A stretch of DNA of 64,000 nt from Octopus sinensis. Taxonomy: Eukaryota. Numbering within the stretch: the stretch's first letter is position 1; the number at the start of each line of letters is the position of its first letter. Positions 7,348 through 9,355 of this stretch are shown piece by piece. The stretch covers positions 91,388,001 to 91,452,000 of the forward strand of contig NC_043001.1 in NCBI RefSeq assembly GCF_006345805.1. Reading direction: 5' to 3'. A program made the position numbers and the translations under genes. Under the pieces are notes generated by a model, which saw only the letters and a program-made list of their open reading frames with translations, was not told where the DNA came from and searched no databases.

Positions 7348-9355
7348 TCTTTGATGAGCAAGTGTAATGAACTGCGTATAAATTGTTTGTCAGCGTATAT
7401 GAAGGATGATATGATAGAGAGGTATGAAAGAGAAATGAAGGGTGAGGTAAAAGACTTTGGAATTGTGATAGGAAACGGAAAGGTAAGTGATGCTGGCGGA
7501 GGGGGCCGTTAACATCGCTTTCATATTATCATTTTTTTCATTTTAATATTCATTTACTCATAATTTTAATCACATTGTTTTATATCCCCCATGTCTTGTA
7601 ATGTTCCCTCTTCGTAGCCCCTAGTGGGTAATAAAGAAATAGAAAGACAACACCATGAGTTCGGTCGTGTTTTTTTACGCTCGTAAAATTCGGTAAAAAA
7701 GATCAAAAAGAATTGTTGTTGTTGTGGAAATTTTGAACGGCGTTGAAGCGGTTTCGCGTTTCGCTGGTTCTGCGCGTTACACTTTTTCTGTTTTGGCGGC
7801 CGTTTTCGGCCTGTCAGACAGGAGGAAATGGATGACCACTCCCTAGTGGAGGAGTCGGAGGAGGAATGGATATTTGAGAACTTGTCGGAGACATCGAACT
7901 CTGAAGACGAGCAAACCGGTGATGTAAATAATGTGGAGATAAAAAACAGGAAAACGTACGCAGGAGTTGCAAAAAAGAAGACGGCACAGGAAAAGGAAAT
8001 AAACCTAGAAAAATTGCCAGGTTTCCAGAGGTATATGAGGAAGGATAGCGGCGAGGTGGAACTGGAACCACCACCAAAGAGAAAGGAATGGTACAATAAA
8101 AGGACCATTATTTACAGGGTGTTCGCAAACGAAAGAAAGAAAATAGAAGTTGTAAACATGGAGTGGATAGAGGAGGCCCTGAGAAGATCGGAGGAGGAAA
8201 TCATTTTTCTGACTCGAGGATCGAAGTACGGTACTGTAGTGGTACATTTTAAAAGTGAGACTGCAGCGAGGAAGATGGCGGTGAAGGCGGTGAAGTCAGA
8301 AAAGGTAACACTTTTACCTATGTATTTGAATAGAAGGATTACACGAGTGAGGGTGGAGGGAGTGCCACCAAACGTTGAGGCAGAGTGGATTGTGGCGGCT
8401 GTGATTAGCGGCCACGAGGAGGAAGTGGATATTCTCCATGCCTCGGTCAAGACCGAGGGCTGGAGAGGCGTAGCAGTGGAGCTGAACGTGCAGGCAGAAA
8501 ACGAGGTACTGGTGGACCTGGCGGAAAGCATCAGATTGGGAGACGTGATTATGAGAGTGTGGGTGGAGGGCAGAGCTCCACGTTGTTACAAGTGTGGCCT
8601 GAGGGGCCACATAAGAGCCTTCTGCCCTCCCCCACCAAGAGAAAAGGAAATCGTTGAGGAAGCTCCAAAAGAGGAGCCCCCAAAAGAGGAAGAAATTAAA
8701 GAGAAGCAGACGGAAAGGGAAACGACAGAGGAGGAGGAGATGCAAAAAGAGTGGGAGGAGGGCAGAAAGAAGAGAAAAGGAAAAACTGTGCGAAGCCCCA
8801 ACCCACCCCAACACCACCCACACCCTTGGAGATCCATCCTGCCCCTGCAAACAGCGATTCCACCCACTCCCCGCCTACAAGAAAAACGAAAACAGACACA
8901 CAGAACATACAAAGGCCCCAGTCCTACTTTTTATGTGTTGTGAGGAAGGGGGATACCGAGAACGCAAGAAGGATTTTTGAGGACGATGTATGGCAAGAGT
9001 ATGAAGACGGTAGCTACGCGGTGTTTGATTCTGAACTTATGGGCTCTTTGATGAGCAAGTGTAATGAACTGCGTATAAATTGTTTGTCAGCGTATATGAA
9101 GGATGATATGATAGAGAGGTATGAAAGAGAAATGAAGGGTGAGGTAAAAGACTTTGGAATTGTGATAGGAAACGGAAAGGTAAGTGATGCTGGCGGAGGG
9201 GGCCGTTAACATCGCTTTCATATTATCATTTTTTTCATTTTAACATTCATTTACTCATAATTTTAATCACATTGTTTTATATCCCCCATGTCTTGTAATG
9301 TTCCCTCTTCGTAGCCCCTAGTGGGTAATAAAGAAATAGAAAGACAACACCATGA
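7348..9355 (+). mobile_element. Tx1/L1-like non-LTR element encoding ORF1 only: full copy 7659-9338 preceded by a 5'-truncated copy 7348-7641
   Basis: 311-bp direct repeats 7348-7658 and 9045-9355 (one mismatch seen). CpG-rich 5' UTR 7659-7827. AATAAA-containing 3' end. No APE or RT sequence between ORF1 and the 3' UTR. Confidence 0.8.
7828..9209 (+). CDS. Tx1-like ORF1 nucleic-acid-binding protein (RRM-like region plus CX2CX4HX4C zinc knuckle), probably with one frameshift near 8800
   Basis: ORF 7828-8943 has TYAGVA, LLPMYLNRRITRVRVEGVPP and RCYKCGLRGHIRAFCP motifs. The overlapping frame 8751-9209 supplies a more protein-like C-terminus (YFLCVVRKGDTENARRIFEDDVWQEY...GGGGR*). Confidence 0.8.

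What the first reader, a model, noticed from the sequence alone, without database searches (positions are those of the whole stretch)
7659..9338. A young ORF1-only ('half-LINE') Tx1-like retroelement
Seen: a 1.68-kb unit with a CpG-rich 5' UTR, one gag-like ORF1 (RRM-like region plus CX2CX4HX4C) and an AATAAA-containing 3' end, but no endonuclease or RT. Known: HAL1 (half-L1) elements are non-autonomous L1 derivatives that keep only ORF1 and borrow ORF2 in trans. Inference: this is an equivalent half-element of the Tx1 clade in a cephalopod, which I do not recall being described. The nearly intact ORF and retained CpGs suggest recent activity.
Basis: partly seen in the sequence, partly recalled or inferred. 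Interest (0 to 1): 0.8.

Follow-up and report, generated by a model that had tools for sequence, protein, structure and literature searches.

The report
Octopus ORF1-only half-LINE retrotransposon
This is a recently inserted octopus jumping gene that has kept only the RNA-binding protein gene of its parent LINE and must borrow the parent's copying enzyme. That lifestyle is already known from mammals and insects, but I found no description of it in cephalopods.

Summary
Window 7659-9337 is a 1,679-bp non-LTR retroelement flanked by a perfect 18-bp target-site duplication (AGAAAGACAACACCATGA). An uninterrupted copy of the host repeat in Octopus sinensis shows the empty site.

It has a CpG-rich 5' UTR and one ORF1 with two RRM-like domains and a CX2CX4HX4C knuckle. 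A frameshift lies at about 8779-8799. Only about 9 codons of ORF2 remain (9187-9215). The last ~120 nt of the 3' UTR follow, with AATAAA and no endonuclease or RT.

ORF1 homologues at 27-35% identity in O. vulgaris, O. sinensis, O. bimaculoides and Argonauta are followed by an L1-type ORF2 (APE + RT + zf-RVT). Those elements carry the same 3' tail, as does a SINE family with several copies in the window.

A 1.6-kb element in O. sinensis (65-72% nt identity) has the same ORF2 deletion junction and its own TSD. So this is a lineage, not a one-off deletion. pN 0.30 against saturated pS shows ORF1 stayed under selection. A third ORF1-only element, with a different junction, lies in O. vulgaris.

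A 5'-truncated copy (7348-7640) sits directly upstream, at the same nick site.

Verdict: a HAL1/HeT-A-type half-LINE of the L1/Tx1 group and a new member of a known kind. The Tx1 placement was not tested phylogenetically.

The parts
7270..7354 (+). Left part of the host repeat into which the elements inserted. It is a dispersed DNA-transposon-like repeat, and 7347-7354 (TCTTTGAT) is microhomology with the element.
   Evidence: 80% identical to L001 3458-3372. The alignment to the uninterrupted copy shows 46 bp of target missing between this point and the TSD.
7348..7640 (+). 5'-truncated copy T of the same element (last ~293 nt: ORF1 C-terminus, ORF2 vestige, 3' tail). It is joined to the host repeat by 6-8 bp of microhomology, with a 46-bp target deletion.
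   Evidence: The 311-bp direct repeat 7348-7658 = 9045-9355 has 1 mismatch. Empty-site alignment.
7641..7658 (+). Target-site duplication, left copy (AGAAAGACAACACCATGA).
   Evidence: Identical to 9338-9355. Present once in the uninterrupted paralogous repeat as AGAAAAACAGCACTATAA followed by CGCAATT.
7659..9337 (+). Full-length ORF1-only (half-LINE) element F, 1,679 bp.
   Evidence: Bounded by the TSD. Collinear with the O. sinensis half-element L001 9459-11056.
7659..7827 (+). CpG-rich 5' UTR and presumed internal promoter.
   Evidence: CpG o/e 2.05 against 0.67 for the window. Homology to other 5' UTRs is not significant. Only a TCGTGTTTTTTT motif is shared with L001.
7828..8943 (+). ORF1 as it stands (371 aa). 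RRM-like domain 1 is about nt 8104-8325 and RRM-like domain 2 about nt 8332-8565.
   Evidence: 343 homologues at E<=1e-3, all identified ones from octopods. AF2 and Foldseek give a tandem-RRM fold.
8584..8625 (+). CCHC zinc knuckle CYKCGLRGHIRAFC (aa 253-266).
   Evidence: Read from the sequence. Weak Pfam zf-CCHC. The cysteines are invariant in the family alignment.
8779..8799 (+). Zone holding the 1-nt frameshift of this copy relative to homologues.
   Evidence: The L001 ORF and XP_036368115 read the P-rich segment in the frame that is frame 3 here. Frame 3 is open from the stop at 8697.
8800..9209 (+). Continuation of ORF1 in frame 3: P-rich linker and C-terminal part, stop at 9207-9209.
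   Evidence: The C-terminal block QSYFLCVVRKGDTENARRIFEDDV aligns only weakly with the C-terminal domain of autonomous ORF1s (hhalign E=0.047).
9178..9215 (+). Conserved ORF1-end/ORF2-start motif AGGTAAGTGATG plus a vestigial ORF2 start (ATG at 9187; MLAEGAVNI). The deletion junction follows ...AACATCGC.
   Evidence: Compare L003 AAGGTAAGTGATGAAC..., where ORF2 begins MNYISVGCLNVRGL. L001 has the same vestige, MLSDGVGNS, and the same junction.
9216..9337 (+). Terminal 3' UTR retained from the autonomous LINE. It holds the clade-wide tail ...GTTCCCTCTTCGTAGCCCCTAGTGGGTAATAAAGAAAT, with AATAAA at 9327-9332 and a possible 4-bp hairpin at 9314-9326.
   Evidence: Significant local alignment to the last ~115 nt of the 3' UTRs of L003 (z 9.4), L004 (z 6.5) and L005 (z 7.8). 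Multiple alignment with LINE and SINE tails. Hairpin (weak).
9338..9355 (+). Target-site duplication, right copy.
9356..10037 (+). Right part of the host repeat (context).
   Evidence: 81% identical to L001 3325-2758 and 80% to window 56683-56007.

Best explanation
Window 7659-9337 is a full-length copy of a non-autonomous, ORF1-only derivative of an octopod L1-superfamily (L1/Tx1-type) LINE.

**Origin.** An ancestral autonomous element lost ORF2 from about codon 10 to a point inside its 3' UTR. The 5' UTR, the whole ORF1 (two RRM-like domains, a CCHC knuckle, a linker and a C-terminal part) and the last ~120 nt of the 3' UTR were kept.

**Proposed mechanism.**
1. The element is transcribed from its CpG-rich 5' UTR.
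2. Its RNA is coated in cis by its own ORF1p.
3. Its conserved 3' tail is recognised in trans by the ORF2p (APE endonuclease and reverse transcriptase) of autonomous relatives. SINEs in the window carry the same tail.
4. ORF2p nicks the bottom strand and primes reverse transcription on the target. This yields TSDs of 18 bp here, 18-19 bp in L001 and about 11 bp in L005. Priming is probably helped by pairing between the AGAAA at the start of the target and the ...AAAGAAAT end of the RNA.

**History of this locus.** The site was hit twice at the same nick. First came a 5'-truncated copy, joined by microhomology with a 46-bp target deletion. Then came the full-length copy, which duplicated the 18-bp target.

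**Shown:** anatomy, TSD and empty site, homology to ORF1 of autonomous LINEs, the shared tail, the shared deletion junction in a second dated-apart copy, and purifying selection on ORF1.

**Inferred:** promoter activity, cis-binding by ORF1p, trans use of ORF2p, the priming microhomology, and the order of the two insertions.
For: - **TSD and empty site:**
- **ORF1 family:** 343 hits. Named members come from O. sinensis, O. vulgaris, O. bimaculoides and Argonauta hians.
- **Fold:** tandem RRM. CCHC.
- **Autonomous relatives with ORF1 + ORF2:**
  - L003: ORF2 of 1,132 aa with Exo_endo_phos, RVT_1 and zf-RVT. It aligns over aa 3-868 with human L1 ORF2p (8sxt), E=2e-71.
  - L004 and L002.
  - L012.
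- **Same 3' tail** in half-elements, autonomous LINEs and SINEs.
- **Second half-element, L001:** collinear with the window element, has the identical deletion junction and its own TSD in a SINE head.
- **Third ORF1-only element, L005:** has the clade tail and a different junction.
- **Selection:** pN 0.30 against pS 0.76 over 285 codons, window versus L001.
- **No ORF2** in the unit.
- **Target-site reuse elsewhere in the clade:** in L012 two different subfamilies are flanked by one identical 19-mer.
- **Known category:** HAL1, HeT-A and Ag-Sponge are ORF1-present non-autonomous LINEs (PMC5786205, PMC5753468). Type I ORF1p (RRM + CCHC) is consistent with Tx1 (PMC5203782).
Against: - Only one full copy and one partial copy of this exact subfamily were seen. 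Copy number in the source genome is unknown.
- The closest relative found is only 47-49% identical in protein.
- This copy has a frameshift, so it cannot make the full ~460-aa protein, unless the shift is a homopolymer assembly error.
- 5' UTR homology to autonomous elements is not significant.
- Trans-mobilisation, transcription and translation were not observed.
- Tx1-clade membership was not tested by phylogeny.
- The three insertion sites are not one specific sequence, unlike classical Tx1-group elements.
Confidence: 0.8

Rival explanations
1. A one-off internal deletion of a single autonomous LINE copy at this locus. This would be a dead, locus-specific remnant, not a transposing ORF1-only family.
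For: Only one full copy is in the window. This copy carries a frameshift. No exact or close copies were retrievable.
Against: The adjacent truncated copy T covers the junction and the tail and is an independent integration. It has its own microhomology junction and a target deletion. L001 in O. sinensis has the same junction at 65-72% nt identity and its own TSD. ORF1 remained under purifying selection.
Confidence: 0.04
2. An LTR-type element: the 311-bp direct repeats are LTRs flanking a Gag gene.
For: Near-identical 311-bp direct repeats flank a gag-like ORF with a CCHC knuckle.
Against: - The repeat contains the C-terminal coding part of the ORF and ends with 18 bp of host-repeat sequence.
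- The left repeat has no unit 5' end in front of it.
- There are no TG...CA termini, no TSD outside the repeats and no PBS or PPT.
- ORF1 homologues are followed by APE + RT ORF2s of L1 type, not by a pol gene.
Confidence: 0.01
3. A domesticated ORF1-derived host gene (as L1TD1 is in mammals), not a mobile element.
For: Several homologues are annotated as genes: XP_036368115, XP_036364761, and LOC115225585 with three isoforms. ORF1 is under purifying selection. L013 shows an ORF1 homologue with no ORF2 and no tail nearby.
Against: The window copy has a perfect TSD, an empty site, a LINE 3' tail, a vestigial ORF2 start, a frameshift and a truncated sister copy. All of these are signatures of retrotransposition, not of a fixed host gene.
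Confidence: 0.03
4. On the tandem arrangement only: the partial copy plus full copy arose from one insertion followed by unequal crossing-over between the TSD copies and a later deletion. Alternatively it is an assembly artefact. Either way it is not two insertions at one nick site.
For: T and F differ by only 1 of 311 nt. The three L003 tandem units are 99.7% identical, which fits duplication.
Against: This route needs three events against two. In L012 two different subfamilies (64% nt identity in ORF1) are separated by the same 19-mer that precedes the first one. Duplication cannot produce that. The left junction of T shows microhomology plus a target deletion, as is typical of a 5'-truncated TPRT product.
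Confidence: 0.2

Closest known systems
HAL1 (half-L1) of mammals (Smit 1999; Bao & Jurka 2010, as cited in PMC5753468 and PMC5786205)
   Same: A non-autonomous derivative in the L1 superfamily that keeps ORF1 and the ends of the parent and has lost ORF2. It is presumably mobilised by the parent's ORF2p. It seems to have arisen more than once, since the window/L001 junction differs from the L005 junction.
   Different: - ORF1p here is Type I (two RRM-like domains + CCHC), not the coiled-coil/Transposase_22 Type II protein.
- The host is a cephalopod.
- The parent is a 3'-tail-specific LINE without poly(A), and its tail is also carried by SINEs in the window.
- A vestigial ORF2 start is retained.
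HeT-A (Jockey clade, Drosophila telomeres) and Ag-Sponge (CR1 clade, Anopheles): ORF1-present bipartite non-autonomous LINEs (PMC5786205)
   Same: Each encodes only a Gag/ORF1-like protein and depends on an autonomous relative for RT. HeT-A also forms head-to-tail arrays and has an internal frameshift in gag.
   Different: They belong to different LINE clades. HeT-A is telomere-specialised, whereas the octopus element sits in ordinary dispersed repeats. The frameshift here is absent from the closest relative, so it is probably a mutation.
Tx1 / L1-Tx1 LINEs (Xenopus Tx1L and relatives; 'L1-Tx1' families catalogued in octopus genomes, PMC13282606, PMC8967140)
   Same: The autonomous relatives have an L1-like APE + RT + zf-RVT ORF2 and a Type I ORF1p, as described for Tx1-type elements (PMC5203782). 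L1-Tx1 is the L1-superfamily class reported as active in O. vulgaris.
   Different: No RT phylogeny was done. No single specific target sequence was found: there are three different targets, only a shared AGAAA start in two TSDs, and repeated reuse of sites. The element in the window lacks ORF2.
SINE/LINE pairs sharing a 3' tail (stringent-type LINEs such as eel UnaL2 and zebrafish ZfL2; PMC4176376)
   Same: A conserved ~45-60-nt 3' tail is shared by autonomous LINEs, the half-LINE and SINEs. This is the arrangement in which ORF2p recognises the tail RNA.
   Different: The hitch-hiker here encodes a protein. Tail recognition has not been demonstrated for this clade.

Membership tests
ORF1-present bipartite non-autonomous LINE (HAL1 / HeT-A / Ag-Sponge type) | Encodes a protein homologous to the ORF1p of an autonomous LINE | tested here: met
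   tblastn and blastp give 27-35% identity over ~230 aa to ORF1 of L003, L002 and L004, each followed by ORF2.
ORF1-present bipartite non-autonomous LINE (HAL1 / HeT-A / Ag-Sponge type) | Lacks endonuclease and reverse transcriptase | tested here: met
   No Pfam EN or RT domain. No tblastn hit of a related ORF2 within 7659-9355. Only ~9 ORF2 codons remain.
ORF1-present bipartite non-autonomous LINE (HAL1 / HeT-A / Ag-Sponge type) | Keeps the 3' end of the autonomous counterpart | tested here: met
   The last ~115 nt align with the 3' UTR ends of L003 and L004, z 9.4 and 6.5. Multiple alignment.
ORF1-present bipartite non-autonomous LINE (HAL1 / HeT-A / Ag-Sponge type) | Keeps the 5' end of the autonomous counterpart | tested here: inconclusive
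   5' UTR similarity to L003 and L001 is not above shuffles, z 0.8 and 1.8. Only short T-rich motifs are shared.
ORF1-present bipartite non-autonomous LINE (HAL1 / HeT-A / Ag-Sponge type) | Several independently inserted copies share the deletion junction, each with its own TSD | tested here: met
   Window F (18-bp TSD), window T (own 5' junction) and L001 (18-19-bp TSD in a SINE head) all share ...AACAKCGC|TTTCATATT. Genome-wide copy number was not obtainable.
ORF1-present bipartite non-autonomous LINE (HAL1 / HeT-A / Ag-Sponge type) | Mobilised in trans by the partner's ORF2p | not testable with these tools
   Needs a retrotransposition assay. Inferred here from the shared tail and the TSDs.
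HAL1 proper (mammalian L1-derived) | ORF1p of the mammalian L1 type (coiled coil + RRM + CTD; Pfam Transposase_22) | tested here: not met
   No Transposase_22 hit. The model shows two RRM-like domains plus CCHC. It is an analogue of HAL1, not a member.
L1 superfamily (L1/Tx1 group) of non-LTR retrotransposons | Parent elements have an ORF2 with an N-terminal APE endonuclease, an L1-like RT and a C-terminal zinc-binding region | tested here: met
   L003 ORF2 has Exo_endo_phos, RVT_1 and zf-RVT, and aligns over aa 3-868 with human L1 ORF2p at E=2e-71. L004, L002 and L012 are likewise.
Tx1 clade | RT phylogeny groups the element with Tx1 rather than with L1 proper | not tested
   No reference Tx1/L1 RT set was available, and the large protein search timed out. 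Indirect support only: octopus L1-superfamily LINEs are catalogued as L1-Tx1 (PMC13282606, PMC8967140).
Tx1 clade | Type I ORF1p (RRM + CCHC) | tested here: met
   The definition is quoted in PMC5203782.
Tx1 clade | Insertion into one specific target sequence | tested here: not met
   The targets differ: a transposon-like repeat (window), a SINE head (L001) and another sequence (L005). The only regularities are an AGAAA start in two TSDs and repeated reuse of a site.
LTR retrotransposon (Gag-only or solo structure) | True LTRs with TG...CA ends, PBS, PPT, and a TSD outside the LTRs | tested here: not met
   The direct repeat is a truncated copy plus the TSD. It includes coding sequence and host-repeat sequence.

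The most novel reading that the evidence does not exclude
Octopods carry old, diversified and still-active lineages of ORF1-only half-LINEs of the L1/Tx1 group. These arose at least twice and have kept ORF1p under selection since losing ORF2. They ride on the same 3' tail as the SINEs seen in the window. That would imply that in this tail-specific LINE system a cis-supplied ORF1p gives a real advantage for trans-mobilisation. In addition, the whole clade (LINE, half-LINE and SINE) tends to re-insert at the nick site next to an existing copy, which builds head-to-tail arrays separated by the TSD.
Probability: 0.5. Interest if true: 0.55.

Novelty: new member of a known kind. Interest (0 to 1): 0.45.

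Why it matters
ORF1-only LINE derivatives are rare and informative. They show that ORF1p supplied in cis is worth keeping even when RT is borrowed. In the sources read here, three cases are listed: HAL1, HeT-A and Ag-Sponge.

A cephalopod case in the L1/Tx1 group has a Type I ORF1p and a sequence-specific 3' tail that SINEs in the window share. It gives a natural three-way comparison of autonomous LINE, half-LINE and SINE competing for one ORF2p.

It also bears on octopus genome annotation. Several 'uncharacterized protein' or 'CCHC-type domain-containing protein' gene models in O. sinensis, O. vulgaris and O. bimaculoides are ORF1s of this clade.

It is relevant to work on LINE activity in octopus tissues as well.

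Tried and rejected
- **Word-indexed protein search.** It gave nothing or timed out. The exhaustive HMMER search was what found the family.
- **Exact look-up of the window ORF1** in public assemblies: not on record.
- **Metagenome scan for the junction motif:** 0 hits. No cephalopod genome could be searched by DNA, so copy number is unknown.
- **Intron hypothesis.** The candidate was GT at 9180 to AG at 9313, by analogy with intron-containing Penelope elements. I rejected it. The acceptor AG is not conserved in L001, L003 or L004. The GTAAGT belongs to the conserved ORF1-end/ORF2-start region.
- **LTR hypothesis:** rejected.
- **CR1-like LINE at 41.5-45.3 kb as partner:** rejected. It has a different ORF1 and a different tail.
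- **zf-RVT ORF at 18.5 kb as partner:** rejected. It is not similar to the clade's ORF2 and has a (TAA)n tail.
- **Remnant of the ORF2 C-terminus in the last 50 aa of the window ORF:** no support.
- **C-terminal domain homology:** only weak (hhalign E=0.047).
- **5' UTR homology:** not significant.
- **Tail hairpin.** A 4-bp stem with slight covariation appeared in one alignment. It was not recovered in a second alignment, which contained a mis-cut sequence. I treat it as tentative.
- **Bacterial promoter/terminator scan:** irrelevant for a eukaryotic element.
- **dN/dS ratio:** dS is saturated, so only pN well below pS is reported.
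Full report
**1. What is in the sequence**

Window 7659-9337 is a 1,679-bp unit. It begins GTTCGGTCGTGTTTTTTTACG and ends ...GCCCCTAGTGGGTAATAAAGAAAT. It is flanked by two identical copies of the 18-mer AGAAAGACAACACCATGA, at 7641-7658 and 9338-9355.

The sequence outside is a dispersed repeat. Window 7270-7355 and 9338-9876 match, at about 80%, one continuous copy in Octopus sinensis (L001, minus strand). Aligning that uninterrupted copy shows ...TTGTTTGTTTTTGAT, then 46 bp, then AGAAAAACAGCACTATAA, then CGCAATT.... The 18-mer is therefore host sequence present once before insertion, which makes it a target-site duplication (TSD).

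I call the host repeat Tc1/mariner-like only from recalled motifs (QQDSAPCH, NSPDCNPLDYYVW). Pfam gave no hit on the short ORFs.

**2. Anatomy of the unit**

- **5' UTR.** 7659-7827 has about 16 CpGs in 169 nt, giving CpG o/e 2.05 against 0.67 for the window.
- **ORF1.** 7828-8943 encodes 371 aa.
- **Fold.** An AlphaFold2 model built on 95 homologues is confident for aa ~55-270 (pLDDT above 90). Foldseek against the PDB returns tandem-RRM proteins: IMP3 RRM12 at E=1e-5, then U2AF65, raver1 and hnRNPA2B1.
- **Knuckle.** Directly after the RRM-like domains comes CYKCGLRGHIRAFC (aa 253-266). It is a CX2CX4HX4C knuckle with invariant cysteines in the family.
- **ORF1p type.** This is the Type I ORF1p of Khazina and Weichenrieder, as summarised in PMC5203782. 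[quoted passage not shown]
- **Frameshift.** After the knuckle this copy is frameshifted. The nearest homologue (O. sinensis XP_036368115 and the L001 ORF) reads ...PQPTPTPPTP...THSLPTRKQKIDTQN in frame. That corresponds to frame 3 of the window. The shift lies in 8779-8799, next to an A-run. The corrected ORF would be about 460 aa, ending at 9209.
- **No ORF2.** There is no endonuclease or RT.

**3. Relatives and the parent**

The exhaustive HMMER search found 343 proteins at E<=1e-3. Those that carry names are from O. sinensis, O. vulgaris, O. bimaculoides and Argonauta hians.

Fetching their loci showed that several are ORF1s of autonomous LINEs:

- **L003 (O. vulgaris).** ORF1 of 516 aa is followed, with overlap, by an ORF2 of 1,132 aa. 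The ORF2 has Exo_endo_phos, RVT_1 and zf-RVT. It aligns over aa 3-868 with human L1 ORF2p at E=2e-71.
- **L004 (Argonauta), L002 (O. sinensis) and L012 (O. bimaculoides).** These have the same layout.

The parent clade is thus in the L1 superfamily. Octopus repeat catalogues list this superfamily as L1-Tx1, with 13 recently active families in O. vulgaris (PMC13282606; also PMC8967140). I could not run an RT phylogeny, so 'Tx1' remains a likely but untested label.

**4. The shared 3' tail**

The last ~45-60 nt read ...TTGTAATGTTCCCTCTTCGTAGCCCCTAGTGGGTAATAAAGAAAT. This tail recurs, with variation, in three places:

- at the 3' ends of the autonomous LINEs of L003, L004 and L002;
- in the other half-elements;
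- in SINE copies in the window (11083+, 59855-, 63775-).

The post-junction 122 nt of the window element align to the last ~115 nt of the L003, L004 and L005 3' UTRs, well above shuffles (z 9.4, 6.5, 7.8).

This is the pattern of tail-specific ('stringent') LINE/SINE partnerships (PMC4176376). A small hairpin (GCCC/GGGY) is possible but weakly supported.

**5. The deletion junction, and why this is a lineage**

In the autonomous L003, the ORF1 end and ORF2 start read AAGGTAAGTGATGAACTAC..., with ORF2 = MNYISVGCLNVRGL.

The window reads AAGGTAAGTGATGCTGGCGGAGGGGGCCGTTAACATCGC|TTTCATATT (9178-9224). That gives a vestigial ORF2 start, MLAEGAVNI, which then runs straight into the terminal 3' UTR.

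The O. sinensis element in L001 (9459-~11056, about 1.6 kb) has several matching features:

- It is collinear with the window element (65% nt identity over ORF1, 72% over the 3' part).
- It carries the same vestige (MLSDGVGNS) and the same junction, AACAGCGC|TTTCATATT.
- It lies in a different place, the head of a SINE.
- It has its own TSD, (C)AGAAAYGTTAGCACGCCG. Other SINE copies show that target uninterrupted.

So ORF2 was lost once, before these two lineages diverged, and both kept transposing.

Over 285 aligned codons pN is 0.30 while pS is 0.76, which is saturated. ORF1 therefore stayed under purifying selection.

A third ORF1-only element lies in O. vulgaris (L005, about 5918-7654). It has an ORF of 389 aa, 32% identical to the window ORF1, and the clade tail. 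There is no ORF2 within 6 kb. Its junction is different and its 3' UTR is about 500 nt, which suggests an independent origin. Its 11-bp TSD is less certain, because the downstream flank resembles a LINE 5' end.

**6. The upstream partial copy**

7348-7658 repeats 9045-9355 with one mismatch. It consists of the last 293 nt of the element plus the 18-mer.

Its left end joins the host repeat at TCTTTGAT, which is 6-8 bp of microhomology. The 46 bp of host sequence that should precede the 18-mer are missing. This is what a 5'-truncated TPRT product with a target deletion looks like.

The simplest history is two insertions at the same bottom-strand nick, just left of AGAAAG. The truncated copy came first. 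The full-length copy then duplicated the 18-mer.

Support for site reuse comes from L012. There, two different subfamilies (64% nt identity in ORF1) are arranged as X-E1-X-E2 with an identical 19-mer X. L003 holds three units, 99.7% identical, separated by a short spacer also found 5' of the first unit. Unequal crossing-over followed by deletion remains a possible alternative for the window (about 0.2).

The TSDs of the window element and of L001 both begin AGAAA. This matches the ...AAAGAAAT end of the element and suggests microhomology-assisted priming. That is an inference.

**7. Comparison with what is known**

ORF1-present non-autonomous LINEs are a recognised category. It includes HAL1 (L1 clade), HeT-A (Jockey clade) and Ag-Sponge (CR1 clade) (PMC5786205). 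HAL1 arose several times in mammals (PMC5753468).

The octopus element works like these. It is not HAL1 itself, because it has a different ORF1p type, host and tail biology.

My literature searches found no description of such an element in cephalopods. The library is incomplete and Repbase could not be consulted.

**8. Verdict**

It is a new member of a known kind. Interest is moderate, resting on:

- age and continued selection on ORF1;
- at least two origins;
- a tail shared with SINEs;
- clade-wide reuse of insertion sites.

Three limits remain. Copy number and activity in the source genome were not measured. Tx1 placement was not tested. This particular copy is frameshifted.

Noticed in passing
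window 7348-9355; L003 4440-~19300; L012 5764-12675: Head-to-tail pairs or arrays separated by a TSD-like spacer recur in this LINE clade.
- Window: partial copy + 18-mer + full copy + 18-mer.
- L003: three 5.27-kb units, 99.7% identical.
- L012: two different subfamilies sharing an identical 19-mer (TTTTTCAAACAGCTGGTCG) before each.
This suggests re-insertion at the nick site next to a resident copy.
   Followed up: partly
window 9178-9185; L001 10900-10907; L003 ~6053-6060; L004 ~11572-11595; L002 ~11804-11810; L005 7151-7157: A 5'-splice-site-like motif (AGGTAAGT, or GGTAAAT/GGTAGGT) sits at the end of ORF1, just before the ORF2 ATG. It is present in every element examined, including ones with only 27-35% ORF1 identity. 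No function is known; candidates are a splice donor, a U1 site or a translational coupling signal.
   Followed up: partly
window 63751-63840 (-), 59780-59930 (-), 11020-11110 (+): SINE copies carrying the same 3' tail are directly followed by the head of another SINE. At 63.75 kb the junction (...AAAGAAATA|ATAAACGTTAGCACGTCGGGCGAAAT) is at the same position of the SINE head as the target of the L001 half-LINE. This hints at a preferred |AGAAA nick site.
   Followed up: partly
window 6245-6343 (+): Rfam U6 snRNA match (54 bits, E=7e-11, full length). It overlaps a 70-nt inverted repeat (6225-6294 / 6313-6382, 89% complementary). It may be a U6 gene, a pseudogene or a U-derived retroposon.
   Followed up: no
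window 41491-45256 (-), tail to ~41440; SINE head 41395-41340 (-): A CR1-like LINE with an endonuclease + RT ORF2, in two ORFs of 510 and 478 aa plus a 188-aa C-terminal ORF. Its 3' end is ...GGCCGCAGCTCTAAGCTGTAACAAGCA(AT)n. It is unrelated to the half-LINE in both ORF1 and tail. A tRNA-like SINE head lies next to it.
   Followed up: partly
window 18526-19116 (+) to ~19330: An ORF with a zf-RVT domain, followed about 200 nt later by a (TAA)n run. This is the 3' end of another LINE type and is not similar to the ORF2 of the clade studied here.
   Followed up: partly
L013 6001-6846 (O. sinensis CM016886.1, LOC115225585): An ORF1 homologue of 281 aa annotated with three transcript isoforms. There is no ORF2 within 6 kb and no clade tail. 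It may be a domesticated or otherwise expressed ORF1-derived gene.
   Followed up: no
window 46250-47600: About 1.3 kb of low-complexity TA/CA-rich simple sequence just upstream of the CR1-like LINE. It produces long spurious ORFs on both strands.
   Followed up: no
public annotations (XP_036368115.1, XP_036364761.1, CAI9742213.1 'EPM2A-interacting 1-like', A0A0L8G4Z0, A0A0L8FKL1, GAB1605864.1): Several octopod 'genes' in public annotations are ORF1s of this LINE clade. The name 'EPM2A-interacting 1-like' on the O. vulgaris protein appears to be a mis-annotation of a LINE ORF1.
   Followed up: partly
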